Assembly: GCF_902459465.1 (NCBI RefSeq) | Contig: NC_047069.1 | Location: 12,834,001 to 12,898,000 of the forward strand | Direction of reading: 5' to 3' | Origin: Asterias rubens | Taxonomy: Eukaryota | Length of the DNA: 64,000 bases | In this document: one piece after another, positions 3,437-39,100 of the stretch | Layout of the letters: the number at the start of each line of letters is the position of its first letter | How positions within the stretch are numbered: the stretch's first letter is position 1 | Translations under genes and position numbers: made by a program | Notes under the pieces: model-generated | Seen by the model: only the letters and a program-made list of their open reading frames with translations | Database searches by the model: none | Told to the model about the DNA's origin: nothing

Positions 3437-6400
3437 TTAACTGAGCTCACTTAAAGCACAGCTGAAGCAGAAGGGTTTGGTGCAGTGGCCTGGTCCCTCA
3501 CACATATAGGAAGAGCTGACATTGCAACCACTAGAACGCAGGGGACTAGACGCTAACGATCCAACATTGCCACTCTCGTCAAACTTTTTCATCGGAGACG
3601 CAATCAACCTCCTCGCTACTGTCTTGGCAGGCGACCCTCTCTGGTCAACTTTGGTTGAACTCCGCACAGATTTGGTGTCCGACTGATATGCCCTTGTTGG
3701 GGAGTTTGCGTACATTTTCCTGCTTTTTTCCACACGGCCTGTGCGTGGCGGTGAAGCACTGTGGAGATTTCTGGCGATGCTCTTCGTCGATTTTGGAGAG
3801 GAGATAATCTGGCCGCACCGGATGATGGTTTTATGTTTGGTTTTGAAGCTTCCTACGTGGTTTCTTTTACTGACTTCGGGAACGGCCACTGGTACTTCCG
3901 CAGGGTCACTGTCATATGTGTCCATGATGCTGTGGTTGGACACCAGGGAGAGAAATTTAGCAGAGTCACCTGAAGAATCACTCTCCTCGTCCGAGAAGTC
4001 CAGCGTTTGTTCCGCTCGGACAACGAGCTTCCTCTCTCCTCGGATTAGAGTGGTATCTGAATTATTCTTCCCTTGTTTTGACACTGTTCTGTTTGGCGCA
4101 AAAGTCTTGTTTGCTAAAACTTTCTCCTTCTTTGAATGAAAAGGACTTGACTGTCCAAACTCTCCATCATTTTCTGAATTTCTAAGATCTTTATGATATC
4201 TCTCTGATTGTCGTTGATGCGTGTACCGTTCTAGCTGCGTCTTGGTATCGACATCAAAAACTCTGTCATGCTCTTGAGACTTTCGCGAAAGATGACTTGC
4301 TCTTGATTTATCTTTGCCCGAGATGCTGTTATCTCTATGGTCATTATAGCTCATGGGAGCTGGTTTGCCGTAAGAATGAGCAGTGCGTCGACTGCGGAAG
4401 TGACTTGGACCTGGCGATGAATCATCTGCTGTTAGTGAGTAAGGATCGACGTCAACTTCCATCTCATCCTCGGAATCGTCATCAAAATCTCTGATGGTCA
4501 TATGGGTTTGGTTAAATTCTTCTGAGGCTCGCTGCCTATCATTCAATCTCAAATGTTCAGCCATAAGGCTTGTCTTCGGATGACCCTCGGAGAGCTTTTT
4601 CTGTTTTTTCCTGACAGCCTGTTCCAAAGATGTCTTTTTATCAGAACCTTTAGGGAGTTGGCCTTTAACGGGTCTGTTGGTTGCTTGGGGCAAAGCTAGG
4701 GGCGAAGCCAGAGACATGCGATTCAACGGGGAGGAGAGCGTGGAGGGTGACCTTTGAACTGTAGGGGTCAAAATACTCCTCTTGACCTTTGAGGTCTTTG
4801 AGGACAACGGGGTCGTCTTTGAGTCGTCTTGAACATCTTCAGCACTGTTTTCCTTCAGATGCCTGGACTTCTGCATTGACTTTTTGCCAGTGTTGTTTGC
4901 AGTCCTTATTGGTAATTGTCTAGTGGTTGAAGGTTTTTGCTCACTGTGTTTTCTCCTTGCGTCCTGTTTTGTTATTGAAGCCGGAGTTCTCCGGCAGTCC
5001 AATTTTGGATTGACTGAATTCAAATCAGTGTGTAGGTCTGGGGTGTCAGTCGACCGTGAAGAGCGATGATGATGAGCTGTTCGTCTGATTTGAGAATCTG
5101 TCACCCTGAGGTCGGCTCCACAAACTTCAGAATGCTTGGCGTGTTGCTCTGGTACATTTAACAATTCATTGCTGTTGCCAGGAATTTGTCTCGTGGAGAT
5201 GTGAACCCCTTTGCACACAGATTTGTCTTTTCTAGTAGGAGCCATAGTCTTAAGTTCCCTCGTACCTTCCTTCAAATGTCGATTACTTCCCTGTACTTCA
5301 GGCCTAGCAATATTGGTTGCTTCAACTACTTCTCTCTGGTGTTTACAATGACTTGCAATTTCAACAACCGTTGGTGTCTTTGGCGTCCTTGCAATTTGGT
5401 TTGGTCCATCATCAGAAGTTTCACTTCGCTGATCATCATCACTCTCGGAATCAAACCTTAAACAGTCTAATGTCATCTCAGAAGCAAAGTCATTGCTCTG
5501 AATGATGATCTCCTTTGCTGATTGACTTCTGTGACCTGTACTTTTCTCTTCTTTTGACAATGAGGGACTCTGGAGGCGCAGTAACGCATTCGTTAGTGGA
5601 CCTGGAGAGGGCGCTCCAGAGCCTTCTCGCCTTACTCTCCGTCGTGGTGTCAAATCCAAACTATCAAAATTGATACCTGGTATGATCAGTGGCTTCGGCG
5701 ATCGGAATATCTCCATGATTTCCTGAGTGTTAAACCGAGGGGAAGCAAGGCTCGTCTTTGAGTTTACCGTTACGACTTTCCGCTGCCGGGCTCTAGGGGT
5801 GATGCCCGATACATCGCAGTTACTGGGACTCCTAATGGAATCTTGACGGTTGTGATTCCTTGTTGTTGGTGTGTTTGATTTCAGTGAATTATGAGCAGGT
5901 CTTCTGTTGGCGTCATCATATTTGATGGGAGTTCTGAATTCTGAGCTCCTTTCAGACTTTGGGGACTTGCTTTGTTCGTCGTCACTTCTAACTTCAGGCT
6001 TAGACTGAGCACTAAAGGGCACCACTCCGAGGCACATCTCTCCCTGCCCGTCAAGGGGTAACTCAAGTTCTCTGTGCCGATCCAAATCCAGTTGTGGTTT
6101 CCTCTTGGCTGTTCCAAGTGCAGAGGGTTGAATCTCACTAAGCATAGTGCTGTTGCAAATTGCCTCAAAGGGCGGCTGGGATTTTTTGCCCCTCGAGTCT
6201 CTGTTCTGGTTCACCCTCGAGAGCAGATTGGAAGGGCGGAAAAGTTGTTGGTTAGAATGCAGGTTACCAGCTAAGATAGTGCTGCAGTCTGTGTAGTCGG
6301 AGTCGGTGCTGGTGATTGTAAGTCCATCTAAGAGCCTCTCATCCTGCTGAGGAAAATCTTCATTTTTACTGCTAGTATTACCCGCACCTGTTATCCGATT

Positions 6401-9400
6401 CAATTTTGAAGTTCTTTTTGGTGTGGTCCTGGACTGGAGTGTCGACCACGCGGAGATGGATCCACTTGTTGCTTCACTGCTCTCAATAGTTCCCGCGCTT
6501 GCCTCGTCCTCACTCGACGAGTCCATCTCATCAACACCATCACCATCGCTAAAGCTGTCAGCAAGAATCGACTGCATCTTGAATAAGAATCGGTTCCGCT
6601 CCTCAAGGATGGAAGGAAGTTCATCTTTGAATTCATACGGATCCTCCTCCTCCTCCTCCTCCTCATCTTCGTCGTTCTCACTAAGTTCCTTAATCATCTC
6701 TTGCTCTTTTTTCTCTTTTACTCGATACTCATCCTCGAACCTCTTGGAGAGATTTCCACGAGCTCTCTGGTGAGCGCGATGGATGGGGTCACTTGTGGTG
6801 TCTTGAGGTCTTTGGCGTTGCGTCAGTGTTTTGAGAGAGGATTTTGTTGGGGTGGAGATCGGGCCGCTGCAGTCGGACTCCACATCCTCATTGCCTGAAT
6901 CCTCTGAATGTGAATTACGACTCATCAAATCATCTGTAAAAGGAACAACAAAAACAAATTACAGACCAGAATATTCATAGTGTTTGGCCCAATTTCATAG
7001 AGCTGTTTAAAGGCACTGAACACCTTTTGTAATTGTCAAAGACCGGTATTCTCACTTGGTGTATCCCATCATAAACATAAAATAACAAATCTGGACTCAA
7101 CCTACATAGTTGTAAGAGAACAGTGAAAGAAAACAGACTCTTGTTGCACAAATTTGTGTGCTTTCAGATGCCTGATAAAAGGCTTCAAGCCTGAATTTTT
7201 TTAATATTTCAGTGAGAAATTACCTTTTTTCGAAAACTTTTTCACAATGTTATATACTATAAATAAAACAGCTCTCCGTAATTTGTTACCGGGTAAGCTT
7301 TTATGCTACTAAATATTTTGATTCAGTAATTACCATTAATGTCCAGTGCCTTTAAGCACAAAAAGTAACTAAGCACAGAACGACGGTACAAGCCAACTTC
7401 TGTGGTGCTTGCTTTATTTTATCCAAGGAAACTTGACCGGTAAATGAGGAATCACAAAATCCTGACATCAAGAAAAATTCCTGAGCAAGTTACTTATAAT
7501 TGGTTTGGCCAGGACGTATTAACTCTCAAAATAAGGCAAAACTAGAGTGTGGATTTGGGCAGGTGAACAATAAAAATTCCCCCTCCCCCCCTCACAAAAA
7601 AAATAATAATACAAATTGACCAGGAGAACCAACTTACCATCAACTCTTTGTACAGCTTTTGCTCTCTCTTCTTTGTTGACATGTTTGGGATTCTGGACAA
7701 AGGAAATATATAAATTGGGACATTAGAAAGCTTTTGTCAAATATCAAGTGAAATTGTATGATGCTGGCTTTCATATCATTATCTACATTTGACCTGTTTG
7801 ATGACTTGGGTCTGTCAAAGTGAACCTACAAGAAGATTTGTCTAATTTGTTCTAAATCTTTCATACTCGACAGACTTGAAAGACACATGTATTTATCACT
7901 CTAAAAAAAGGCAATATACATTAAATTTCCTTTACCCACAAATCTTTGAGGTACGAAGGCAAACAATTGTTCAAGATCTCGGACTTCATCTCCTCAGTGT
8001 GTTCACAACTGTACCGTTCGGTGCTCTGGTATTTTTCAACTCCAATTTAAAGAGAATGTGTATAAGGGGGAACAAATCTGATCTTTCAACCACAGTATGA
8101 GCTTGGAAATGGAGGGTGATCATTGACAAAACTAAAGCTGTCTAACAAATCCTCTGGTTGCTCATGCTCAAGTATTTCTTTTGTTTATCTTGGTTGACTA
8201 AAGTTGCCACACAACAGAATTTAAAGATATTTTTTCAGACTCTCATAGTCAATTATTTTTTCCAAAAAGATATTGCACAATGCGGTAGCCTATTATTACC
8301 CATTTGAAAAACACAATACCACAGGGATTGCCCGGTCATAAGCTTACTGGCCCAAAGCTAAAATCTAGGGCCTAGGGCCTGTGGTCTAGTGTTGACTTCA
8401 AGCCCTGGTAAAACACTTGCAAAGCCCTGTTTATTACTATTACATGGTGGAGGATTCATGTGTCTGTGTACAGTACCTGGTGGTAGGTATAGTTGACTAA
8501 CGTCTCCGTCCCTGATGTGTCTTCACTCTCGCTGAGGCGGCTGCCAAAAGCCGAGTCCGTACTGTCCTTAGTTGAGTCCCAAGGGGTAGCTACGAAGAAC
8601 AAAATGAAAAAAATTGCAAAACAAAGCGGCAAATCCTACTTTTCTGAACAAAATTCAGGCTAGTATTTTATCCTTGGACAAGAAGTAGGAACATCTTTTT
8701 TTCGCAAGGGCTGACCTACATGTTGAATAAGGAGTTGGGTTTAATGGACTTTGCAGGCTAATTAATCACAATTTTTTGTATTGTTTCAAGGCAAAATATT
8801 TGACAATCAGACTATAAATAGGAAGAATACCATGCCTGGCAACAATTGTGGATAGTTTTTCCAGTTTTTTCAAGGTTACCCTCCTGTGACTAAGCCCCCC
8901 TCCCCCTAATTTTTCTAAAATAATAACATGAATAATAATTGTTACCTTTGTTAGGGGAGACTTTATCTGCTGCTAGTTTGATTGTTCCGATCCGTATCTT
9001 TCCTGTCCTGCCAATGGAACCTGCATGAATAAAAAATAAAAAACAGTAAGCAACAATCAATAAAAGTTAATTTTGCAATCAAATTTGCAAATGGTACACA
9101 TACATGTATTAACTCATTCTGTGTCTTGGCTCTGAGGTCTACTAGAGCATGGGGACTCAAGATCTGCTGGCCCCTAGACATCGGGGGTGTGAGGTTCAAA
9201 TCTTGGGCATGACTCCTGTGTCTTTGAGCAACCACTTAACCATAAATTGCTTCTCTTAACACAGTATATCAATCAATAGGAACCTACAAGGGCTGAGATT
9301 GAAATTATGTTGGATTAACACAAGCAGCTTGATGTTGGATGGTACCCAAGAAATTGAGAAAGTTTGAGGATTGAATCAAGTATGTAAGATGAACAAGGAT

Positions 9401-10782
9401 AATGTTGTGAATCGCCTTTACCTACAATCCCAGGAAAAAAACATTGGTACACATCACCCTTCCAAGTACACCACTCCTTAGTTTATCCATATTGTAATGG
9501 CAAAGCCGATTGGCTGGTAAGAGGTGAGGGGGAAGCGCCAGTTAAGCTTCGCTGTGGAGCTTCCGCTGCTGGTCGCCCCCTGCTAAGCCATTGGGTAAAC
9601 TGTTTGTCAATAACTTTGTTGGGGGTGTCAGTCAGAAGCCATTCGACCTGTACTGTTCTCCATGGTTGTACTAGCCAGAGATCACCCGAGTTTCCTGGGA
9701 AGCAGCAGTAGGGCCTGGATTGTAATAACCAGTCACTTTTTAATATGCAGTTCTGCCCTCTACACTGATTTATTATGTTACCTCGATCCTCTACCACTGT
9801 CATGTTGCTGAGATCCAGAACGTCGGATTCAACAAACGGGCGGTCATACTGCAAAGGGGAAGGTTACAAACAAAAACAACAAGAGTTGTTGTTGAATTTT
9901 GTTTTACCATTTGATTTTGAATTTGTGACACTTTCGCTTAATAAGCAAAAAATTAGATCCAATCATAATGCATCAAACAGGAACAGAACGCTTTTCGACC
10001 ACATTTGTAGAAACCTTTTGAAACTACTTATTAATTTATTTTAATGACCAATGATAAATACATTATAAATGCCTGGTATTTCATCTTTGACATATTGAGA
10101 AGCCAGGCCCAGGCAAAAAGCATGTAAATCAATTAATAGCACATCATATCTCTCCAATCAAGTTAAGTTAAACCATGGAATGGAGCAATAAGGCTTGAAA
10201 TAAAATTGGATAACTTTCCGTATGGCGCCACCACTTTTTCACTCATTTTTACAAAAAGGGATATCTCATTGAGGTAAATTAGAATGATATTTTTTCATAT
10301 CAAATGAAAAAGTGGTGGCGCCATACGGAAACTTTTCCATAAAATTATTTAATGCTTAAATTAAAAGTTAAGTTAAACAAATATTTAAACAAAAGAAAAG
10401 CGAATAGTTTTTAATTTTATAATAAAAAAAAAATTCAATTTTCTGAAAATTTACACAAGCAGCAAATCAAGTAAGAGGCAACTTGGTCGGGGTGACTTTG
10501 TAGGGGACGAGGACCGGGAACGATTTTGAAATAGGGTGATTTTGTGTGTGCGGGGGCCGGGGCGACTTCGCAAGGGGGGGCCACTGACCGAAACCACTTG
10601 TTATCGGTAATGACTTTGTATTCATTTTTATTTGCATGAATTATTAATTTAAAGCGAGGGAAGTTTGAAAAGCATACCTTGTCAATAATTGCCTCCAAAT
10701 TCGTCCGAAACCTTGTGGAAATTCGCTCTTTATCTCTAAGATAACTGCTAGTCTTCGTCTCATTTTGCGTCAAGAATGCCAT
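3437..10782 (-). CDS. Scm3/HJURP-like CENP-A chaperone candidate, 6 coding exons, 1303 aa, largely disordered
   Basis: Exons (minus) 10782-10678, 9848-9782, 9020-8946, 8589-8477, 7692-7638, 6933-3437. All junctions are GT-AG with compatible phases and total 3912 nt. The spliced N-terminus MAFLTQNETKTSSYLRDKERISTRFRTNLEAIIDK|YDRPFVESDVLDLSNMTVVEDR|GSIG fits the Scm3 pattern (RF..LE.I..KY..PF...D..DL....V..D.G). Exon 6 is the 1163-aa ORF of the track and ends in CEGPGHCTKPFCFSC. Gene model confidence is high; family assignment is moderately high. Confidence 0.8.
7011..7351. mobile_element. MITE family A copy nested in a family D MITE
   Basis: GAGCTGT-TTAA[AGGCACTGAACAC...GTCCAGTGCCT]TTAA-GCACAAAAAG splits the family D sequence GAGCTGCTTAAGCA. 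Confidence 0.85.
10208..10338. mobile_element. ~130-bp MITE with 8-bp TSD (ATAAAATT), GG termini (Merlin-like)
   Basis: TIRs GGATAACTTTCCGTATGGCGCCACCACTTTTTCA / TGAAAAAGTGGTGGCGCCATACGGAAACTTTTCC; ATAAAATT at 10200-10207 and 10339-10346. Confidence 0.9.
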
Positions 10783-10946
10783 GATTCTGAACGAACTATT
10801 CTCAGAAAATAAGACGACCTTTTTTCATTTTCGGCGGGTGCGTGATCGATGGCGATGGCGATGTTGTTTTCCTAAAATCTACAGACTGAAAAGCGCCCTC
10901 AATAGTTTAATTCTGGTAAACAATGAATTACACAACTATTTTTGAG
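10783..10946. promoter_or_regulatory. Bidirectional promoter between the Scm3-like gene and ETFDH
   Basis: The divergent start codons are only 164 bp apart (10782 minus, 10947 plus). The interval is CpG-rich relative to its flanks and has repeated GATGGCG (YY1-like) motifs at 10848-10863. Confidence 0.8.
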
Positions 10947-13900
10947 ATGGCGCTGTCCACGTCGAGACTATGCCGTGCTGGTATGTAAAAAAAGTATTTT
11001 GTTTGTGTATTTCTTTACCTGTAAATCCTTTTAATTTCAATTATTTATGTAGCCCTATGATATCCCGTTGTTTTCGAGTTGTTTCTATGCGTCTTATTTG
11101 TCTCATAAGAGAGTTTATCAAGACATTAGCACCGGCAGTTTTTCATTCTTAGAAAAATCAGATTCTCTGTTGTGTTGTGATGCTGACAGTCAATGATGAT
11201 GTAATTGTATTGTAATGTCTTTTTTTTCTAGGGCGGTGAGCTCAAAGGGTCAATTTTTGTTTACATTAACTCCTTCCCCCTCCATGGTTATTATAGCTCT
11301 ATGGTTTATGTTTATCCGTGCCCATGGTTTATCATACCACAATGACAAAAATATAGTTCAAACTGATTGTTTTGTTGATATTAAAACTTTATTTTTAAAA
11401 GTCTATGCATGGATGGACTCGGTCGGACGTAGAAAGTGTGATCAGCAGGCAGGCAATCAGTTGAATTGAACCAACATTGAAATAATTGTTATCTCTACAG
11501 ACTCAACCTTGTCATTGTGAGTGTCGACTGGACTGGACCGGAGTACAGTATCTCAGTTCCATTACATTCATTAAACAAAATTGAGAGAATCCACCATAAC
11601 TATATTGACACTACATTTTAGGGGTGGGGCTAGCTGTTCGGGCAGCCAACCCATCACAAACAGTGTATGGACTGTAGTGTTTGTGTGCATTTGTAGTTAG
11701 TTGAATTGGGCCTTTTTGTGTATTTTGTTTTCAAGGTTCTTAATTGGTAAACAGAATTGTCCAAAGGCCCACATCACAACTTATATTATAAAATAACAAA
11801 CCTGTGAAAATTTAGGCTCAATCTGTCATCGGAGTCAAGAAAAAATAACTGGAAAACCCACCCTTGTTCCCACCCTTTCTTCGTGTCATGACATGTGTTC
11901 AAAATAAATCAGTTATTCTCGGTATAGAGAATTGACAATTGTTTTAATGTTTTCTCAAGTAAAGCATTTCATGGAACAATATTTCAAGGGAAGTCTTTCA
12001 CCATTACCTTCTGTAAACCCTATAAGTTACATGTACTTGTAAATCTGTGAACTTTTAATTTTTTGTTCTGTTCAGAAAGTGTCCAATGGCTTTGAAACCA
12101 AATAAAATTTAAAAAACAGTTGATCATCCGGATTTAAAAAAAAAAAAGGAGGATGAGGGCCTTTAACATTTGTTTTCATTATTTTGTTTTCTAAGATGGC
12201 CGCTTAGTATTTTAAATCAAACAGGCCACCAATTCTTCAGTTTGAAAACCAGCCGCAAACTTATTTTATATCTATTTGTTGCATGAGGACCCGGGTTAAC
12301 AGGGTCAAATTATTACACTAAAAATATTTGCTGGTACATCACTAATTTTGTTTTATGAAACAGATGGTTACACGTGTTCGAGAAAACCAAAGATATTAGA
12401 ATGCTAATGCGCAACATGATAAACTCCAGCTGAAATTGTTGGCCTGTTTTTTGCGTTTATTTATTAACATATTTATCTATTTTTATATTTCAATGTTGTT
12501 CTCTTTAGGACCAGCTGGAGAGGAGAGCCTCTCGACAGGCTGTGTTTCTTTTTTCTTTTTTCTTTTTTTTTTCTAAACAAAAATCGAAAAATAAAAAATA
12601 GTTAAAAGGTCTCTGTTGCTTGTTACCAAGTAAGGTTTATGCTTATATGTATATTTTGAGTAATTACCAAATGTGTACAGTGCCTTTAAAGACCTCAAGT
12701 CATATTCCTTTATCTCCTTTCTCTCTAATTCAATTCATGTTTTGTCAGCAGCGTGCAGATATGCCAGAGTGTCTACTAAGGCATCGTACTGCACATCCAC
12801 AACACCCAAAATCACTACACACTACACAGTCGTCCCAAGGGAAAAAGATGAAAGATGGAAAGGTAATGGTTTTAAATATTAAAGAATGACCCAGTAATAT
12901 TCAGGGTGTGAGTTTGGCACTAGACCACATCTCACAGGCTGAGGCCAGTGATTTTAGCATTGGGCAAGTAAACTGAATGACCCAGTAATATTCAGGGTTT
13001 GAGTTTGGCACTAGACCATAGCACCCAGGCTGAGGCCAGTGATTTTAGCATTGGGCCAGTAAACTGAATGACCCAGTAATATTCAGGGTTTGAGTTTGGC
13101 ACTAGACCACAGCACCCAGGCTGAGGCCAGTGATTTTAGCATTGGGCCAGTAAACTGAATGACCCAGTAATATTCAGGGTTTGAGTTTGGCACTAGACCA
13201 GAGCACCCAGGCTGAGGCCAGTGATTTTAGCATTGGGCCAGTGAACTGAATGACCCAGTAATATTCAGGGTTTGAGTTTGGCACTAGACTACATCTCACA
13301 GGCTGAGGCCAGTGATTTTAGCCTTGGGCAAGTAAACTGAATGACCCAGTAATATTCAGGGTTTGAGTTTGGCACTAGACCATAGCACCCAGGCTGAGGC
13401 CAGTGATATTAGCATTGGGCCAGTAAACTCATGACCTGACAATTCCTGCAGTCTTGTGATTTTCAATTGAATAATAGGCCCTAGCCACTGTGATTTCAGA
13501 AAGAGCCGACGTTGGAATGTTGACTTGGAGTCTGGTACTTATACAATTATAACTCTGTTGAGTATCAAAGTACATCGTACACTTCTGTAAACCATCAGAC
13601 AAATAAAATAAAGCTTCTATCAGTACTTGTTAAAAAGATAAACTTACAAGATGAGAAAGCAGATTCTCACGAAGATTCCGATAGAGGTGAAATAAATTCT
13701 GGTACGGTTATTATTTTGAACTTTGATTATATATTCAGTTCAAAAGGCATTTTATTTGATCTTTGATCTTTTGACTGACGCAAAAACTCCTAATTGAATT
13801 GTACAGACTCATCTGTATTTGGTATAAAGGACATCGTATTTGAAATATCACTTGTAAATAATATAAAATAATATAATGAATAGGGTAGGTGGCCTTAGCT

Positions 13901-16900
13901 TTCGATCCAAACCGGACCTTCTTCAGAGGCATAAAATAAGTACAAACAAATACATGTATCCATTTATAGAAGAAGAGAGGGGAAAGGGATTAAGGGAAGG
14001 ATCATATTATAATAATAAGATTACATGTTGTCTTGCAATTACATTTCACTGCCACGCAATAGATTTTTCAATATTCGGTAGACATCTAAGTTCTTATTAA
14101 AGAACTGGTTATTAACTTCTACTTTCACTTTAGTGGATTGAAGGGACTTCCCGCCATAAACTTCACTATTGCAGAGTGAGTTCTAAAAGGCAGTGGACAC
14201 TATTGGTAATTGTCAAAGACTTGCCTTCATAGCTGGTGTATCTCGACATATGCATAAAATAACAACCCTGTGAAAATTTGAGCTCAATCGGTCATCGAAG
14301 TTGCGAGATAATAATGAAAGAAAAATAATCCTTGTCACACGAAGTTGTGTGCGTTCAGATGGTTGATTTCGAGACCTCAAGTTCTAAATCTGAGGTCTCG
14401 AAATCAAATTCGTGGAAAATTACTTCTTTCTCGAAAACTATGGCACTTCAGAGGGAGCCGTTATTCACAATGTTTTATACCGTCAACCTCTCCCCATTAC
14501 TCGTCATCAAGAAAGGTTTTGTGCCAATAATTATTTTGAGTAATTACCAGTAGTGTCCACTGCCTTTAATTGGTCTCAACGTTTGGACTAGCTTGCACTA
14601 GTTATCATCAGGAGACTTGCTGAATTACACTTTGTTTGTGACTTCCTAGATGTGGAGATGGAACGTTACGCTGATGAGGCTGATGTTGTGATCGTAGGAG
14701 GCGGCCCAGCCGGGATGGCCGCTGCCATCAAACTCAAACAACTGAGTCTAGAAAAAGGAACTGAACTCAGGGTGTGTCTGGTGGAGAAGGCTGCTGAAAT
14801 AGGTAAGCGCTAAGACATGGGGCCAATTTCATAGAGCTGCTTAAGCAGAAAATATTCCTTAACAATTGTCTGCTTAGCAGATATAAGCAGGATACCAGTC
14901 ACAAAATGTGTTTGTGGCATGGTAGTTTAGTTGGTAACCATGTTCTGGTTAGCACAATTTTGTTGTGCTTAGCACAATTTTGTTGTGCTTAGCTATTGTT
15001 TTTGCTGAAAGCAGTTCTATGAAGTTGGGCCCTGTGTTGTAGCTAGACTAATTTTAGTGGTGGGGTCCAGATCCACCAAGGGCAAATCAGATCAACAAAA
15101 TTATTTGTGTTTAGATATATGGGCCATCATTGCTGAAGTGCAATCTGGGGGAAGTCTTTGCTGGGCGGCACAGTGTATATTTTTTGTTAGAATGCTGGGA
15201 AAAAATGTTTTGTCCTGGGTAGGCCCATCTTGCACTGCCTACCACGCTGATTAAGACCAACAAAGTCATTGTGGATGTTTTGTGAGATTAAAACCGAGTG
15301 TTTTTTTAAGTTGTCATCAGTTTTAAAATTTAGTTAAACAATGCTGTTGCTAACTCCTCCGTCGTGATGTGACAAACGAAACCACCGAGCCAACCTGGAT
15401 AACTAACAAGTTGCTGGTGTATTTTTTTCTTTTCAGGTGGTCACACACTCTCTGGAGCGTGCGTTGAGCCCCGGGTATTTGATGAGCTTATACCTGACTG
15501 GAAGGAGAAAGGCTTGCCCCTTCTCACCCCTGTAAAGGAGGACAAATTTGGGATCCTGACGGAGAAGGGACGAATTCCAATTCCAATTTTTAAAGGTACA
15601 TAAACACAAAGATTTTTTTTAAGGGCAATTTCAAAGTTACTCACAAAAATGAGAAATTCTCCTATGCATAACACATAATTGTGCATTGTCAAAATAATCT
15701 TAGCATTTGCCCATACCTGTAGGTATTACTGATTTTACACTTTGACATTAACTTTGAGCTATGTATTGATGTAGAAAGGATTCGCTATGTGTTTTGTGTT
15801 GTCGTTTAGCCTTCGAGAAAGGCTCTGCTAGTGTCGAATCATCAGGCCAGAACCTTTTTTTACATTTATGTCGTAAGTCTTTTAGGTTGGTAAGCAGATT
15901 GCAACAGCTATTTATGCTTCTGTGTACTTAAGATTCATTTCTTGTTATTTATCTCCCTTTAAGGGCTTCCAATGTACAACCATGGCAATTACATTGTGAG
16001 GTTGGGTAACGTTGTACGCTGGCTCGGTGAATACGCAGAAGAGCTGGGAGTTGAGATATATCCTGGCTACCCAGCAAGTGAGGTTAGTAGAGGAAGAGTT
16101 AAGTTTTTTGGTTTATAACAAATGATAATAGAGCGTCAATGGCGCTACATGGAGATTTTCTGCTGAAATTGTGTGCCCTTGTATGTGTTTTTTTATGCGT
16201 ATTTGTAACATTGTTATTGCTGATTGTGTATTTAATATTTGTATATTTTTACATTTGTACATTTTTAAATTTCAGTTGTGGTCTTTAGCTGGAGAGGAAA
16301 GCCTCTAGACAGTAACTGTGTTTCTTTTAGGCAATCCGTTGGGCTCAAGATGGTTGTTTTCCTCTGTATTTTAATTGCTCATTGCTATATCTTGTAATGT
16401 TTTCACCTAATTAATGTGCGTAATATTGTACTTTTTATCTACCCGCGAAAATTAAGTTAATATAAATGTGAAATGTGTTCTGAAGGCCATTTCAGTAAGC
16501 AACTCTTTTGATGCAACATTAGACAAGTGCAGACACTGACATTTACTGTCAAAGATATAACAAATCATTTGCTTGCTGAAATGGTACAGGGACTCTGTAA
16601 TCTTTGGTTATAACTCGCTTTTATACTAGTGTAAACACAACCCAAGAAGGGTAGTTCTGTTAGGATCCTACCTCACTCCAACAAAATCCAACACGATATG
16701 ATAACTGAACACCCAAACTGTTGGACTGTATGCAGGCATGAAATTCTTCCTACATTTACTTTAGTCTGTTTCTGATTTGTTGCCCTTATTTTTTAATCAG
16801 CAAAGAGCGTCATTAACAAGCTGGGAAAAAAAACATTAAAGCCTACACCATATGAACATATAGGTCAGCCTTGGTGCTCTAAATGTTTGACAAAATATCA

Positions 16901-19900
16901 TGCCTGTATTATGTAGGTTTGCATAATCCATGTAATCGGCTTATTACAGTCCTCAGTTTAACAGAATAAAATGTGGGCACATACCAAACCAAACCAGTTT
17001 GACTTACCATTTCTGTTGTGATTTTGTGTAGCAATTGCCCCAAATAAACCATTTAAACAATGTGATAAACTTACCTGCAGATTCTGTATCATGAAGATGG
17101 AAGTGTTAAAGGCATAGCAACCAGCGATGTGGGAATTGCAAAGGATGGCTCACCAAAGGTAAGAAGAGACTCAAGTTTTTTCACTTCCTTCCCACAAAGT
17201 TTTATTGTTGATTTTTGTTTTGTCGTCAGCCTGAACTGGTAAAAAGTTCATCATGTTTTATGAAGCCCTTAATTTTATCCTTGAGAAGGCTCATTGAATT
17301 CCACAAAGGAATTCTTCCATGGAACTCTGCTCATCATACCCCAACTGCTTTTTATTGTTATTAAATGGTTGAATCCTTGCATTTTCAGGACACATTTGAG
17401 AGAGGAATGGAGCTCCATGCAAAATGTACAATCTTCGCCGAGGGATGCCATGGTCATCTAGGCAAGGAACTGTACAAGAAGTTTGACCTCAGGAAGGACT
17501 GTCAACCACAGACATACGCCATCGGTCTGAAAGAGGTCAGGCGGAACACTTTTATCATTTAAATTCTTGGAAAAAAACAAAGCCTCACCCCCAAAATAAA
17601 TTAACTAAATAAAAATAAAACAGCTCCAGATTCATCAACCAGACAGCTTTTTCTGCTGATCTGATACCTTTGGTTTCCGGAACTGTTTAATTGCTTTCAT
17701 TCTATATAAATGTAGATGTATACAATAAAAGTAAGAGGTGAAATTTTCATTCCAAAAGGTGGTCAGGTTTCCGAGAAATCACCTAAGTGGTTATGTCAAC
17801 AGAGTAAGAATAATCTCCAATAGGAATACACAATCTTAAAACCTAAATGTCACTAGTTTCTCAGATTCAAATTTTGGGGCATAACAACTTAAATCCTTTC
17901 ACATAACCATATTACTTTAAAGTGTTTTCTAGGGAATGCTGCTGTAGGCTTCTAAATATTTATCTCCATTAACTTTCAGAGTGATTACCAAGCGTATACC
18001 TTCCCTTAAACTGTGTCTGGTTATCATGAAATAATGCAATTTTTTCCAAATTGATCTTGGATTAAAGGTATGGGAAGTTGATCCAAGCCAGCACCATCCA
18101 GGGCGAGTGGAACACACCGTGGGTTGGCCACTGGTAAGTTGAGTTTAGCAAGTTGGCCTAAACAAAGAAACAAGTGATTTATTTGATCATCAAACAAGCC
18201 TTACTAGCTTCTGTAGATGTCCTAGGGCGACCTTGCTACGTTTCCCATGGATGGCCAGCGTAACCAGTTGTAGAGTTGCAATACAATACAACACAATACA
18301 CCAACACGACCGCCCCTGATGTTAGTAAGGCATACACAAGGCGGACACAAGTTCGAAATTGGCATCCCAAACTTTATTTTGGTCACAACAAAATTGCGTT
18401 AAATAATAATGATGTTTGAAGATATTAAATAACTTGATTTCTGTGTTTTTTCCCGTTCAGAAACTTGACACATACGGTGGCTCATTCCTCTACCACTTGG
18501 ATGAGGGCTCCCCAACAGTTGTCGTTGGGTTTGTCGTTTGTCTAGATTACAAAAACCCATACATCAGTCCATTCAAAGAGCTACAGAGATTCAAGCAGCA
18601 TCCGTCCATCAGGCCCACGTTTGCAGGAGGCACAAGGATAGCTTATGGTGCAAGGGCCCTCAATGAGGGCGGTGTACAGGTAAATAAAGACATCGGAGCA
18701 TGATTTCATAAAGCTGTCAGTAATGCTTAGAACGGTTTCTTTGCTAAGTGAAAATGAGTGGGCACCAGTCACAACAACCTTTAGCTAAGCAAGTTTTTTT
18801 CTGTGCTGAAAATTTTGTGTCCGCTTTAAGGCACAGATTTTATCGTGTCATCAAAACTTCTTACAGGGCCAAAATTTCTGAGCTATGAAGTAAAACAAAA
18901 AAACACAAAGTAAGCACAAGACTATAATTGCTTACCAGAAATATCTTACCAGCCAAACTTTAACCTTTAGTGTATTGTTGCTGACTGAATCCCTGCTTAT
19001 TTTTTCCTCAGCAGAAATTCATTGAGCACAATTTTTCTGCTCGAGCACCTCTTTGAAAATTGAGCCCATCGTTGTCCAGAATTTATTAGTCTTTGGGAAC
19101 TCGACCACCTTGATATGGTTGAAGTCTGTTAAGATTGCTGTATGATTTATGACATGAGTTGTGACATGAGTTGTGATGTTGTGCAGTAGGACCCGATTTA
19201 TCAATTTTCACCCCATTTATCAAATTTTGTTTGTTTGTATAATTGTGTCTTGCATTATGGTGCATTATTGTTGTCTTTGATCCATTGTTCTTTGCAAACT
19301 GTACTGTATTTGTTTCCAATTTCTAAATATTATAGTTTGTAATGTGCCATTTACCATTTTGCATATGAACCATTATTTTATTACTTTTTCTCTGTGTTTA
19401 TTTAAATTCTTTACTGCCTTTGTACTTTTCCATGTAATTTCTTTTTCATTGTACCTGAGTTTTAGCTTTGTTTTTTTCAATTGGCCTAGATGTATTTCCT
19501 AAAACTTAACTGCTCCTACAAATATAACGCTGTGTTGTCCGTGCTGTGTGATTTGTTTTTAAATCCGAAGTGTAACATTAAGTATGACTCTTTATCTGAC
19601 ACAAGGGAATTTTCAGGCAATCAATCATATTCATACCAAACAATTATAAAGGTCATACTCATTTCATTTTAGAGGGTGAGCTCGAGAAAATTGACTAAAG
19701 TGAGGTTTGAACATGGGACCTCTGGATAAATGTGTCGGCGCTCTACCAACTGAGTGCCAAGCCCTAATACCCAGCCAGTTATCTGTTGCAGCAGCCTTAT
19801 CTGTGTGGACAAGTGCGTTCCACTATGTCATGCACTTTGTGCATAGTGCAATGATTATTACCGCGATCGGATATTACGAGCTCCTGATATAACGAGGAAT

Positions 19901-22900
19901 ACTGGCCAGCCCGGCGGACCTCATAATAAATAAGAGTCGATTGTATTTTACAAAACCAAAGCTGGCACATTAGTCCAAAGCTTACAGGTTCAAAACCGCT
20001 GTAGTCAATTTTTCTTTGTTCAACCATATACATGTAATATTATTATTTACTCAATCAGTTTCCATTATGATTAATTACTTAATTCATTTTTTAAATACTT
20101 TTAGAAAAAAAAATCTATTTTGCAAGCAAAGTATTCATTATGAATGCTTGACAAAAAAATGACCACCTATGATAAGACACTTATATGCTCTTTGTTTCCT
20201 TCATGATTTCAGTCCATTCCGAAGCTAGCTTTCCCCGGAGGCATGTTAATTGGATGCAGCCCGGGCTTCATGAACGTGCCTAAGCTTAAAGGTACCCATA
20301 ATGCCATGAAAAGCGGCATGATCGCAGCGGAGACGCTGTTTGAAAAGCTCACTCAGGAAAATCCCTCGTCGGAAACAGCAGGTAATGTCTTCTCTTTTTT
20401 TTTCTCACTTAATATTAAAGGCACTGGACACTATTGGTAATTACTCAAAATAATTTTTAGCATTTACATTAACTTGTTATTGAGAAATGGAGAGCTGTTG
20501 ATAGTATAAAGCATTGTTTCAGACAACAAATTTTTTGTGAACTTAATTCAGAATTTGGTTCGGCACGACTCTGGAGCGCCTGTCTGAAAAGGGTGTTAAT
20601 CAGAAATATCAATATTTATAAACCAACTTTTTCTTGTTCCGCCCTTTCTCTGTTATGCAGGGTTATACATTGAAGACTATGAGCCCAAGCTGAAGGATAG
20701 TTGGTTGTGGAAGGAGCTGTACTCAATAAGAAACATCAGACCAGCGTTCTATAATCCTCTAGGAGTCTACGGGTCTATGCTGTATGCGGGCATCTTTTAC
20801 CTCCTAGGAAGAGGGAAGGAACCATGGACACTGAAGCATCATGGTAAGCTGAGCTCAAAATTAACACTGGACCCCAGGCCTGAGGCCAGTGATGTAGCAT
20901 TGGGCCAGAAGACTTACGACAGTACAAGTTTGGCGATCTTGTGTTTTTGAAAAATAATAACCTCACTGCATTTTTAACATACAAATATCTTTCAATTCTG
21001 TTGAGAATTTAACTTTACACATAAGACAAATGAGATCAATCTTATAATAGATGTTGTTTGCATCGGGATAAGGAATATTAATTTTGGTTGTTACACATAC
21101 ACCGATGTTTGTTAGCACTGTTTACTCAGTACTTTCCCGAGTCCTGGGAACAAAATATCTCGGGCATATTACTCGGGTGGGATTCGAACCATAGACCCTT
21201 GCAATTGCAATCTTATCTTAGTGCTTGTTCCAAACACAGCTTCAATGTAGAACTGTGTAGATAGTGTCTCATTTTGGTTCCAGTCTCTGGTCCAGTTAAA
21301 GTTCTGAGCTACAAGCCCTGCAGTCTTGTGCATATTCCCCCCCAATTCGAGCCCAGGTATAATAATAATGGCTTCTTAAACAGCGCTCAGGTCCGTCACG
21401 CAGTGACGCTCATGGCGCTCCAACATTATTACTCCTGGTCACAAGGCCTTAACTCACTCCTTAAACCATCTCAGCTTCCTGGGGAGTATACATCCTTGTG
21501 CAACAAATGCGCTACTCGGCTAAATCAATCACAAGAACCATCTCTGCCCTCACAGGATACCCATTTACCCCTGGGTGGAGAGAAGCAATTGTAGTGAAGT
21601 GTCTTGCTCAGGGACACAAGTGTCACGACCGTGATTCGAACCCACACTCTGCTGAACAGAATCACCAGAGCTTGAATTCTGCGCTCTTCTCCGCTCGGCC
21701 ACGACACCCCATATAATATGTATTATGGGAAGATAACATTTGTAAATTAGTGATTTTGTATGTTTGGGTATTCAGTCTCTTCATACAATAAAGGCCTCCA
21801 TACCCGTTGTTACATATTGCCTTGGTGCCTCTGAAATGGTCCAGTAGGAATTTGCTTACAGGACATATTTTCTGACCTACATCACTCTATGAAATTATAA
21901 TATTTTTTTTTTTGACTTCCTTTTTTGGTTTTTTTGGGCATCGGCTTACCAAAGCATATCTCACAAGAAATGTGTTATCGTGCAGGGGTCCTTTCTCAAA
22001 AAGTTAGGACTAATCCTTGGAGATATTAAAAATGTATGGCGAGTGCTAAGTTAGGACGAGTAACACGTCTTATACTCGATGTAAGACTAGTCTTTACTTT
22101 TTGTGAAATCTACCCCACGTGACATTGCCTCTTGCGTGACATTGCCTCTTGCAGAAGTACACAGCCGCAATCATGGGTACACTTTTTGTTATAAAGACCC
22201 CAATTGAACAGTGTTGAGTAACTCTTTGCAGATCTTGTATACTTGATGTATGACTAGTCTTTACTTTTTGTGAAATCCACCCAACTCAACATTGCCTCAG
22301 GCAGGACATTGCCTGTTGCAGAAGTACACAGCCGCAATCATGGGTACACTTTTTGTAAATAGAAAGACCCCAATTGAACAGTGTTGAGTAACTCTTTGCA
22401 GATCTTGTATTCAACAAACTCCATCATTTTTGACACAGCGATTGCATATACATGTACATGTACATGTACATGTACATGTACATTAAGATAACTGCTACAC
22501 AGTGGTTTTCAAACTGTTGTTCATATTAGGACAACACAAAATTGTGTACACATGATAATGACTGTGCACATTTTGTGCTAACTTACAAAATAATCAAAAG
22601 ACCTTATGCATTTACGTCATCCAGCCTCCATCTTAGAGGTAAAACGATGATGAAACTATTGTACACGTAGCGCACATGTTTGGCCAATGAACGGCAATTT
22701 TTTTACCTCTAGGTGAGGGCGCCTTACTGGTATGACATCATGTGCATAAGGTCTATTCTTCACATTTAAACAAATGCATTCCTCTCCCTCTCACAGGTAA
22801 GGACAACGAGTATTTAAAACCAGCGGCGGAGTGTACCCCCATCGAGTACCCCAAGCCAGACAATGAGGTGAGCTTTGACCTCCTCAGCTCCGTGGCTCTC

Positions 22901-36100: not shown

Positions 36101-39100
36101 TGAGGTTGGACAGGCCCAAAGCTAAAATCAAAGGCCTCAAGCCTTTTTGTCTAAATTCTAATCCTACAATAAAAATACCTACAGATGAACATGTGTACAA
36201 ATTTAAACAGTCTTTTAATAATGCAGTTAACAGAATGTGAGAGGTAAAATATCAAATTTAATTTGACAAATTTCCAAATAACAGACAGCAGGTTTTACAT
36301 CCACAGCTGGTGGACGATGCTCGTAATCGTAATTAGAACAGCCCATATGCTCCCTGTACTAGATACATATTAAAATCAGCTGGTGTTTTTTAGGTATGCT
36401 AAAGTGTACAATCGATCAATTGAGAAAAACGTTTACAGTGTATTAGGCCCTACCATGTCACTCAGAGAGCATCCCACTTTTAGATTTTCCTGTACAAGAT
36501 GTAACTCATTGAAGCGCAGACCTAGAATAACACAGAAGCCATGTGCTCTGCTGGTGCCCTGGTCTTGTCCTTGGTGCCCTTTCTAAAGAGCGCGGATTTT
36601 TCCCATGGAAGTGCCCTTTCAACATGTTAAAATATTCAAAATGATGGCCTCGTCATTGTTGACAAACATGTAGCAATATCTAAAACCAAAACAACTTGTT
36701 TGTTTCATGTTATTTTTGTTCAAATTTGAATGGAAAACATGTAATGGACCAAGTGTGGTTGGAGGTTCAATACTAAGTCATCTACACGTAGCGCAATGGA
36801 CTACCCCATTAGCAAATTTCCTAGAGCTTCTTAAGCACAAAACCAATTTGGCTTTAAAGTCACCAGTCAAAATCACCTGTTTTTGTGACAGGTGTCCTGC
36901 TTAATTGTGCTAATCAGGGTATGTGTAAATGTAAGCATTATTGTGTGCCTAAGCAGCTCTTTGTAATTGGGCCTTGAGGCTGAACAAAAAATGAGCACTA
37001 GTGTTATCAATGTCTTGGTTTTGTTTGTGATGATTATACATGATGTGATGATTTGTCTTTAAAAGGTTAAGGGATTCCTGTTGTCCAATTTACATCAAAT
37101 TTGAACACCCTGTTTTTTTTTAAATTCCGTTGCAGACCCTGCTCTACATTTCTAATACAGTAATTTATTCTCATTCTCTCCTGCAGTTTGGGAACACCTG
37201 CTACTGTAATTCCGTTCTTCAAGCGTTGTATTTCTGCAAGCCCTTCCGGGACAAGGTACTCGGCTACAAGGCCCAGCCGAAGAAGAAGGAGAACCTACTG
37301 ACGTGCCTCAGCGACCTCTTCAATAACATCACCACACAGAAGAAGAAAGTGGGCGTCATCGCACCCAAGAAGTTCATCGGGAGGCTGCGCAAGGAAAATG
37401 GTAGGAGTGTGCGATGGGTGGTTTTTTTTAGCAGAAATATTTTTAGTTTTGGATTGAACAAAGACAAACTGATGAGGGTGGAACTAGAACCCATGTCCTT
37501 TGGTATTAAAGACAGTGGACACTATTTGTAATTGTCAAAGACCAGTACTCTCACTTGGTGTATCTCAACATATGCACGAAATAACAAACCTGTGGAAATT
37601 TGAGCTCAATTGGTCGTCGAAGTTGCGAGATAATAATGAAAGAAAAAACACCCTTGTCACACGAAGTAGTGTGCGTTTAGATGGTTGATTTCGAGACCTC
37701 AAGTTCTAAACTTGAGGTCTCGAAATCAAGTTTGTGGAAAATTACTTCTTTCACGAAAAACTACTCCACTTCAGAGGGAGCCGTTTCTCACAATGTTTTA
37801 TACTACCAACCTCTCCCCATTACTCGTTACCAAGTAAGGTTTCGTGCGAATAATTATTTTGAGTAATTACCAATAGTGTCCACTGCCTTTAATGTGCTGG
37901 CCAAAAGATCTTCCTATTTTGTTTTCAGATACATAGAATTTTTTTAACTTGAAACGGATTCATCTAGCAAATTGACATAGCAAAGAAAGCTCGACTGATC
38001 ATTCAACATATATTTTACACAATGAATGCCGATGTTGGATAGCAGCAAATGAATGATGGTTTTGTATTTCATGAGTAGTAATGGATGCATTTTGTGTAGC
38101 ATTGTGCAATGCTATACAAATAAAAAAATCATTCACTGATGTACCATCATTGAACAGAGAGACGTTCATTTAATATCCCTAACTTAATTACAAATTATAG
38201 AGCCATGTTTCTCCCAGGAGAGAGTCATGTCGAATGTTCTGTTGATGTTTGCTCTGATAAGCTCTGTATTTGCATGACTATTCGATCTTAGTGGAGAGTG
38301 GGCCTGAAGCAGAATGAGAAAAGCAAAAACATAGCCCGGTTTTGATTCGCCTTTCTGCATCTCCAGGATGCCAGCCAATTTCTACAAAAACCTTTTTGTT
38401 TTTTTTCTTTTTTTGCTTTAGGGTTGTGTCAGGCAAGGCCTTATTTCGTTCATGAAGGGGTACAGCATTTTTCCTCTTTGATGACAAATTTCAATTTGTA
38501 ATGGAACTTTGCAAGGGCACCAAATCAAAAGCCTAGGGCAACAGGGCACTTGAGTGAAATGACTTTGACTCTAGCAATGTCTCGGGTCGATCGTATTGGC
38601 TCAATACTTTACGCAATCTCATCTTGGCTTGTTCTACTGTTTGATTTTCTTCAGAGGTGTTTGATAACTACATGCAGCAGGATGCCCATGAGTTCCTCAT
38701 CTATCTACTCAATACAATAGCGGATATCCTGCAAGGTATGTGCATTGTTCACAGTGTCTCTCTACAAGTTTCTGCCCACAGTAGTTGGTGCCCGGAAACC
38801 TGCCTGACACTCTTGACTCCCCAACCACCACTGGCAGAATTTTCTGTTTTTGACCACCACACGTTTTCCGAATTGCTGAATTAAACTTGCAGTTTCCTTT
38901 CAAAGGTTTCAACAAAATGTCAAGTTGGATAATTTACCAGTTAAAAATAGTTAATACAAAGCCATACATTTCAAGTACTGTATCTCTCGATTTCGATTTT
39001 AGTATATTTTTATGGTAATCTAAATAAAAAAATACAATTGGTGTTAATAAAATACCAAATCGTTGCTAAGTTGTACTTTGGTTTTGGGTTTTAAAAAGTT

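What the first reader, a model, noticed from the sequence alone, without database searches (positions are those of the whole stretch)
9782..10782. Hidden Scm3/HJURP CENP-A-binding domain: candidate centromeric histone chaperone of an invertebrate deuterostome
Splicing exons 1-3 gives RDKERISTRFRTNLEAIIDK|YDRPFVESDVLDLSNMTVVEDR|GS. This lines up with human HJURP (RASRRRFQRRMQRLIEK-YNQPFEDTPVVQMATLTYETPQG) and with the fungal Scm3 pattern (F..I..KY...F..DEIDL.TG.IV.DNG). The domain is split over two small exons, so the ORF track shows only an anonymous disordered protein. Exon 2 is 67 nt, phase 0 to 1, starting at the Tyr. From memory, human HJURP has the same ...IEK|Y junction and a 67-nt exon 2, which would be strong independent evidence of orthology. 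CENP-A chaperones are fast-evolving and poorly annotated outside yeasts, tetrapods and flies (CAL1).
Basis: partly seen in the sequence, partly recalled or inferred. Interest (0 to 1): 0.9.

Follow-up and report, generated by a model that had tools for sequence, protein, structure and literature searches.

The report
Starfish HJURP gene, already described

Summary
The minus-strand gene has six coding exons (10782..3437). All five junctions, including 10678/9848 and 9782/9020, are carried by transcript contigs in three public runs. The spliced 1303-aa protein is letter-identical to Asterias rubens XP_033632250.1, named "uncharacterized protein LOC117293884".

- Residues 17-60 hit Pfam Scm3 (E 8e-9, above the gathering score).
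- An N-terminal family profile hits the three solved Scm3/HJURP chains: human HJURP, S. cerevisiae Scm3 and K. lactis Scm3.
- AlphaFold2 gives the expected helix plus hairpin.
- The K|Y phase-0 intron is shared by eight bilaterian orthologues, and seven of them have the 67-nt exon 2 (61 nt in Lytechinus). A published mouse Hjurp guide RNA places the exon 1 boundary at the same spot.

It is not new. The Patiria miniata orthologue XP_038057064.1 is listed as HJURP in Sci Adv 2026 (PMC13322267).

Two points are not mentioned in that paper:
- An extreme C-terminal Cys4 motif co-occurs with the Scm3 domain in echinoderms, a brachiopod, an annelid and a fungus. It probably matches the cysteine-rich centromere-targeting domain described for fungal Scm3.
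- A head-to-head pairing with ETFDH is shared with Patiria and Lingula.

The scan had not noted this gene on other DNA.

The parts
10783..10852 (-). 5' UTR. Transcript contigs of X8 and X10 end at 10848 and 10852. It contains a short uORF (ATG at 10827, 8 codons).
10678..10782 (-). Coding exon 1 (aa 1-35). It encodes the Scm3 alpha-helix and ends exactly after Lys35 of the KY dipeptide, phase 0.
9782..9848 (-). Exon 2, 67 nt (aa 36-57.3). It starts at Tyr36 and encodes the acidic/hydrophobic beta-hairpin part of the Scm3 domain. It ends in phase 1 before the conserved Gly58.
8946..9020 (-). Exon 3 (aa 58-82), with the conserved G..IG..L segment just after the Scm3 profile match.
8477..8589 (-). 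Exon 4 (aa 83-120). It holds the echinoderm-conserved block DSTDSAFGS (aa 88-99, window 8540-8575).
7638..7692 (-). Exon 5 (aa 121-138).
3437..6933 (-). Exon 6 (aa 139-1303 plus the stop at 3437-3439). It is a long Ser/Arg/Lys/Thr/Asp/Glu-rich region of low hydrophobicity, probably disordered, with no Pfam match.
5687..5722 (-). Conserved short motif EIMEIFRSPKPL (aa 543-554), shared by echinoderm classes and weakly by Lingula. Its role is unknown.
3458..3502 (-). Extreme C-terminal Cys4 motif C-x5-C-x4-C-x2-C (aa 1283-1297), with four invariant Cys across 13 Scm3-domain proteins.
12664..23560 (+). Neighbouring gene ETFDH (electron-transfer flavoprotein-ubiquinone oxidoreductase), transcribed divergently from the same intergenic region. 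It is not part of the chaperone but forms a conserved gene pair with it.

Best explanation
This is the Asterias rubens orthologue of the CENP-A-specific histone chaperone Scm3/HJURP (RefSeq LOC117293884). Its N-terminus (aa ~7-60) is a bona fide Scm3 domain: a long helix ending in the KY dipeptide, followed by an acidic/hydrophobic beta-hairpin. [quoted passage not shown] This holds a pre-nucleosomal dimer until it is delivered to centromeres. The roughly 1200-aa, probably disordered remainder carries short conserved motifs and ends in a Cys4 cluster. I infer that this cluster is a single-zinc knuckle equivalent to the cysteine-rich domain of fungal Scm3, and that it contributes to centromere targeting.
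For: Splice junctions are present in three transcriptome runs. The model is identical to XP_033632250.1. Pfam Scm3 scores E 8.1e-9, above its cut-off. PDB hits are 3r45_C human HJURP at E 0.012 with the single sequence and 2.7e-8 with the profile, 2l5a Scm3 at 8.3e-8 and 2yfv_C at 6.8e-5. The AF2 model has helix 7-36 and strands 45-47 and 52-55, with pLDDT 77-91 over aa 11-50. The Patiria orthologue P0002 is XP_038057064.1, listed as HJURP in PMC13322267. Intron position and phase are conserved in 8 bilaterian orthologues and agree with the mouse exon 1 boundary. ETFDH microsynteny is shared with Patiria and Lingula. The C-terminal Cys4 co-occurs with the Scm3 domain in proteins that were selected by the N-terminal profile alone. 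hhalign of echinoderm versus non-echinoderm C-termini gives probability 97%, E 1.3e-10.
Against: There is no direct evidence of CENP-A/H4 binding or centromere localisation for this protein. No multimer model could be run. The vertebrate HJURP_mid and HJURP_C domains are absent. The Foldseek match of the monomer model to Scm3 is not significant (E 4). The C-terminal model is uninformative (pLDDT 51). The equivalence of the Cys4 motif with the S. pombe CYS domain rests on one fungal sequence (Basidiobolus), on weak Atlas leads and on my recollection of a paper I could not open.
Confidence: 0.9

Rival explanations
1. A Scm3-domain protein that has diverged in function, for example a general H3/H4-binding or DNA-repair factor, and is not the CENP-A loader. 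Another protein would then do that job in starfish.
For: Outside the 50-aa domain there is no similarity to vertebrate HJURP. The family evolves fast, and the paper reports 9.9% whole-protein identity among deuterostomes.
Against: The paper reports a single strong hit in most deuterostome genomes. Architecture, intron positions and synteny are conserved across phyla, which argues for one orthologous lineage under constraint. The KY dipeptide and the hairpin residues that contact CENP-A in solved complexes are kept.
Confidence: 0.06
2. The C-terminal Cys4 cluster is not the fungal CYS domain. It would be an unrelated short motif, for example a dimerisation half-site, a DNA- or RNA-binding knuckle or a redox/lipidation site, that resembles it by convergence.
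For: The motif is only about 15 residues. AF2 gave no confident fold. The only PDB resemblance is a non-significant one to the UBE3A AZUL zinc loop (E 0.41).
Against: The motif has the same spacing, the same flanking residues (G.G.C[TS]K.FCF.C) and the same extreme C-terminal position in a fungal Scm3 (Basidiobolus), echinoderms, Lingula and Capitella. All of these were found through their N-termini only. The top named Atlas neighbours of the last 32 residues alone are fungal Scm3 clusters, though the scores are weak at 0.58 and 0.55.
Confidence: 0.3
3. Chance resemblance in a non-functional or mis-spliced ORF.
For: None beyond the short length of the domain.
Against: The E-values are 1e-8 to 1e-9. 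Spliced transcripts occur in three runs. A 1303-codon open frame is conserved among starfish, with 92% identity to A. amurensis over the 1164 aa of exon 6.
Confidence: 0.01

Closest known systems
Patiria miniata HJURP candidate XP_038057064.1 (Sci Adv 2026, PMC13322267)
   Same: It is a 1:1 orthologue. It has the same six-exon structure with identical exon lengths 105/67/../113/55, an N-terminal Scm3 domain, the same conserved internal blocks, the same C-terminal Cys4 and the same ETFDH neighbour.
   Different: N-terminal identity is 52% over the first 85-90 residues and 53% over the last 104 residues. The middle is much more diverged. It is 1372 aa against 1303 aa.
Human HJURP (PDB 3R45 chain C)
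   Same: It shares the Scm3 domain with the ...IEK-Y..PF...V....T motif order. The exon 1 boundary after the Lys is inferred for mouse Hjurp.
   Different: The starfish protein has no HJURP_mid or HJURP_C (HCTD) domains and no homology to the Mis18-binding R2 region (paper). The paper names the scm3 domain as the single feature shared across deuterostome HJURPs. From memory, human HJURP lacks the C-terminal Cys4; this was not checked here.
Fungal Scm3 (S. cerevisiae 2L5A, K. lactis 2YFV, S. pombe Scm3 with its cysteine-rich CYS domain; Folco et al. 2024 NAR, title seen, content from memory)
   Same: It has the Scm3 domain. A fungal Scm3 from Basidiobolus ranarum carries the same C-terminal C-x5-C-x4-C-x2-C motif.
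   Different: The starfish protein is four to six times longer than the yeast proteins. No AT-hook, Myb or Mis16-binding segment was recognised. Budding-yeast Scm3 lacks the Cys cluster (from memory of Aravind et al. 2007).
Drosophila CAL1
   Same: The 2026 paper argues that CAL1 is a derived HJURP orthologue with the same chaperone role.
   Different: CAL1 has a degenerate Scm3 region and a C-terminal CENP-C-binding domain. Neither resembles the starfish protein.

Membership tests
Scm3/HJURP (Pfam PF10384) | A profile match to the Scm3 domain above the curated threshold | tested here: met
   E 8.1e-9, 35.5 bits against a cut-off of 24.3, aa 17-60 on profile positions 4-48 of 53. The family profile A2 hits 3r45_C, 2l5a and 2yfv_C.
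Scm3/HJURP (Pfam PF10384) | A conserved KY dipeptide at the end of the helix, spaced hydrophobic residues in the helix, and a downstream alternating acidic/aliphatic strand | tested here: met
   K35 and Y36 are present. Y36 and I32 are invariant, and K35, F40, D44, D47, D56 and G58 are at least 90% conserved in 20 sequences. These criteria are stated in PMC13322267.
Scm3/HJURP (Pfam PF10384) | A helix plus beta-hairpin fold | tested here: met
   The AF2 model has helix 7-36 and strands 45-47 and 52-55, with pLDDT 77-91 over aa 11-50. The Foldseek top hit is 2yfv_C, but it is not significant.
Scm3/HJURP (Pfam PF10384) | Selective binding of the CENP-A/H4 dimer | not testable with these tools
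   No multimer prediction or experiment was available.
Scm3/HJURP (Pfam PF10384) | Centromere localisation and a requirement for CENP-A deposition | not testable with these tools
   This needs tagging and depletion in starfish oocytes or embryos.
Scm3/HJURP (Pfam PF10384) | Orthology, shown by shared gene structure and synteny with accepted members | tested here: met
   The K|Y phase-0 intron is present in 8 of 8 bilaterian orthologues and the 67-nt exon 2 in 7 of 8. The mouse exon 1 boundary lies at ..IAK|gt. ETFDH lies head-to-head in Asterias, Patiria and Lingula.
Vertebrate-type HJURP (HJURP_mid PF12346, HJURP_C PF12347, R1/R2 Mis18-binding repeats) | The presence of HMD/HCTD domains | tested here: not met
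   There is no Pfam hit in aa 139-1303 even at E 10. The paper also finds the R2 homology absent in echinoderms.
Fungal Scm3 cysteine-rich (CYS) domain | A conserved zinc-binding Cys cluster C-terminal to the Scm3 domain | tested here: inconclusive
   Four Cys are invariant in 13 proteins, including the fungus Basidiobolus. hhalign gives probability 97%. Neither the S. pombe CYS sequence nor the paper's text was available, and zinc binding was not tested.

The most novel reading that the evidence does not exclude
The extreme C-terminal Cys4 knuckle of the starfish protein is the same module as the zinc-binding cysteine-rich domain that targets fission-yeast Scm3 to centromeres. That domain has so far been treated as fungal (from memory of Folco et al. 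2024). If they are the same, the ancestral opisthokont chaperone already had the architecture 'N-terminal Scm3 domain ... C-terminal CYS'. Echinoderms (all four classes sampled), a brachiopod and an annelid would have kept it, and gastropods would have lost it, as the sequences found here show. Loss in vertebrates is inferred from memory and was not checked. Starfish HJURP would then be recruited to centromeres in a 'fungal' way. [quoted passage not shown]
Probability: 0.55. Interest if true: 0.45.

Novelty: already known. Interest (0 to 1): 0.2.

Why it matters
The main claim adds little. The gene model is in RefSeq, InterPro-type annotation already flags the Scm3 domain in its relatives, and a 2026 paper names the sister-species protein as HJURP. 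What is useful is a functional name for LOC117293884 in a species used for oocyte and embryo work, and independent support for orthology from intron positions and synteny, which the published survey did not use. The C-terminal Cys4 motif may matter more. If it is the fungal CYS domain, it gives a testable handle on how HJURP finds centromeres in animals that lack the vertebrate Mis18-binding repeats.

Tried and rejected
- Word-indexed homologue searches restricted to aa 1-100 and aa 1200-1303 found only starfish proteins. They are too insensitive for this family.
- The AF2 model of the last 60 residues was uninformative, with pLDDT 51 and no secondary structure.
- A Foldseek search of the N-terminal monomer model against the PDB put K. 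lactis Scm3 first, but at E 4, so it is not evidence.
- The PDB profile search with the C-terminal alignment gave only a non-significant resemblance to the UBE3A AZUL zinc loop (E 0.41). I keep it as a lead, not a classification.
- The papers by Aravind et al. 2007 and Folco et al. 2024 are not held. What I say of their content is from memory.
- The supplements of PMC13322267 held as text do not list Asterias or accession numbers.
- tblastx of the 500-bp upstream flanks of Patiria and Lingula against the window found nothing. The ETFDH neighbour was instead shown by Pfam hits on window ORFs.
- No vertebrate HJURP locus could be fetched, so the 67-nt length of the human exon 2 stays unchecked.
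- The very high read depths at 6971-7441 and 10111-10424 are intronic repeats, not exons.

Full report
**What is in the sequence.**
On the minus strand an ATG at 10782 opens a 105-nt exon. It ends ...GAC AAG|gtatgc, that is ...IIDK, in phase 0. After an 829-nt intron a 67-nt exon (9848..9782) follows an acceptor ...ccctttgcag, starts at TAT (Tyr) and ends ...GAT CGA G|gtaaca in phase 1. A third exon starts at 9020.

I extended the model by phase-compatible splice sites to exon 4 (8589..8477), exon 5 (7692..7638) and a 3.5-kb terminal exon (6933..3437). This gives 1303 codons with no internal stop.

**Transcript evidence.**
Logan contigs from three public runs (X7, X8, X10) of the same organism carry all five junctions. 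Each has CT..AC ends on the plus strand, which is GT..AG on the minus strand, and the contigs reach 10848-10852 at the 5' end. The very high depths at 6971-7441 and 10111-10424 lie in introns and behave as dispersed repeats. The second holds a 50-nt inverted repeat.

**Identity of the gene.**
The large exon found three starfish proteins. Cluster look-up showed that my spliced model is letter-for-letter XP_033632250.1, "uncharacterized protein LOC117293884 [Asterias rubens]". So the window is A. rubens, and RefSeq already holds this exact model. The A. amurensis and Patiria relatives carry a precomputed PF10384 tag.

**Is it an Scm3 domain?**
- The 82-aa spliced N-terminus hits Pfam Scm3 at E 8.1e-9 (35.5 bits, gathering score 24.3) over aa 17-60 and profile positions 4-48 of 53. 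The 1164-aa rest has no Pfam hit even at E 10.
- Against PDB sequences the single peptide's best hit is human HJURP 3r45_C (E 0.012).
- A profile search of 1.84 billion representatives with a three-starfish N-terminal alignment returned 24 proteins.
- A 20-sequence alignment of their N-termini has invariant I32 and Y36. K35, F40, D44, D47, D56 and G58 are at least 90% conserved.
- As a profile, that alignment hits human HJURP (2.7e-8), S. cerevisiae Scm3 in 2l5a (8.3e-8) and K. lactis Scm3 2yfv_C (6.8e-5). Nothing else falls below E 0.07.
- AlphaFold2 on aa 1-120 gives a helix at 7-36 that ends at the KY, and a hairpin at 45-47/52-55, with pLDDT 77-91 across aa 11-50. This is the architecture of the solved domains.
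- Foldseek ranks K. lactis Scm3 first, but not significantly.

**Is it known?**
Yes. [quoted passage not shown] (Sci Adv 2026, PMC13322267) reports previously uncharacterised HJURPs across deuterostomes, including echinoderms. It lists Patiria miniata XP_038057064.1. That accession is P0002, the Patiria orthologue of the window's gene. The paper also notes that InterPro already flags several of these proteins.

**The intron argument.**
I fetched the loci of seven orthologues and mapped their exons by exact translation.
- A phase-0 intron lies exactly between the K and the Y in all eight genes: Asterias, Patiria, Lytechinus, Amphiura, Anneissia, Lingula, Capitella and Physella.
- The next exon is 67 nt in seven of them. 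It is 61 nt in Lytechinus, which has a two-codon deletion. It always ends in phase 1 before the conserved Gly.
- No vertebrate locus could be fetched. However, Filipescu et al. [quoted passage not shown] They also give an exon 2 guide whose complement encodes PFEDDP. This places the mouse boundary at the same K|Y position.
- The 67-nt length of the human exon 2 remains unverified.
- The coelacanth assembly gap of 64 transcript bases that removes the scm3 domain has about the right size for this exon. That is only suggestive.

**Things the published survey does not mention.**
1. C-terminal Cys4 motif. The protein ends in C-x5-C-x4-C-x2-C (aa 1283-1297), six residues before the stop.
   - Among the proteins retrieved by the N-terminal profile alone, the same motif sits at the extreme C-terminus in all three other echinoderm classes sampled, in Lingula, in Capitella and in the fungus Basidiobolus ranarum.
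   - It also occurs in two metagenomic eukaryotic proteins, and with shorter spacing in the ichthyosporean Chromosphaera.
   - Five gastropod proteins found by the same search lack it, as do the short choanoflagellate sequences.
   - The four Cys are invariant. An echinoderm profile aligns to a non-echinoderm profile with probability 97%, E 1.3e-10.
   - The last 32 residues alone have fungal Scm3 clusters as their top named neighbours in the ESM Atlas, at weak scores.
[quoted passage not shown] From memory, it shows zinc binding and an essential role in centromere localisation for S. pombe Scm3. I therefore infer, but have not shown, that the starfish motif is the same module.
2. ETFDH pairing. 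ETFDH lies head-to-head upstream of the gene in the window (Pfam ETFQO_UQ-bd and Fer4_ETF_QO hits). The same pairing occurs in Patiria and in Lingula.
3. Conserved internal blocks. A full-length alignment shows only two further conserved blocks, at aa 88-99 and aa 543-554.

**Mechanism.**
- Shown: transcription, splicing, the domain identity and the conservation pattern.
- Inferred from the solved human and yeast complexes: the helix binds along CENP-A alpha-2 with the KY contacting a conserved Glu, and the hairpin shields the dimer.
- Composition: the long middle has 71% disorder-promoting residues, 31 SP/TP sites in the whole protein and a pI of 8.8. It would serve as a regulated linker.
- Speculative: the Cys4 knuckle helps centromere targeting.

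**Verdict.**

Noticed in passing
window 12664-23560 (+), and L007:1-342, L002:1-265: ETFDH (ETF-ubiquinone oxidoreductase) is transcribed divergently from the HJURP gene. The same head-to-head pair is seen in Patiria miniata and in the brachiopod Lingula anatina, so this is an old bilaterian micro-synteny, possibly with a shared bidirectional promoter. One X7 contig runs on past the HJURP 5' end for about 1.9 kb.
   Followed up: partly
window 3458-3502 (-): The C-terminal Cys4 motif is also noted by the scan as s1-150654. It is shared with Scm3-domain proteins of four echinoderm classes, Lingula, Capitella and the fungus Basidiobolus. It has a weak, non-significant likeness to the zinc loop of the UBE3A AZUL domain (C-x4-C-T..FC.SC).
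   Followed up: partly
window 37124-39474 (+): Exons of a ubiquitin-specific protease are present (Pfam UCH hit, E 9e-11, on 37184-37330). The sequence looks like USP12/USP46.
   Followed up: partly
window 10207-10339: A 50-nt inverted repeat (82% complementary, 33-nt spacer) lies in intron 1. It sits in a segment with word depths of thousands to tens of thousands in all four runs, so it is a dispersed, transcribed MITE-like repeat. A second highly repeated segment lies in intron 5 at 6971-7441.
   Followed up: partly
window 10801-10827 (-): A short upstream ORF (ATG at 10827, 8 codons, stop TGA) lies in the 5' UTR, about 45 nt before the main ATG.
   Followed up: no
P0003 (Acanthaster planci isoform X2): The annotated isoform replaces exon 1 by another first exon and so lacks the Scm3 helix, beginning ...ILQ|YDRPF. 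It is either an alternative promoter in intron 1 or an annotation artefact.
   Followed up: no
window 5687-5722 (-) and 8540-8575 (-): Two short linear motifs (EIMEIFRSPKPL and DSTDSAFGS) are conserved across echinoderm classes in an otherwise unalignable region. They are candidates for partner-binding or phospho-regulated sites.
   Followed up: no
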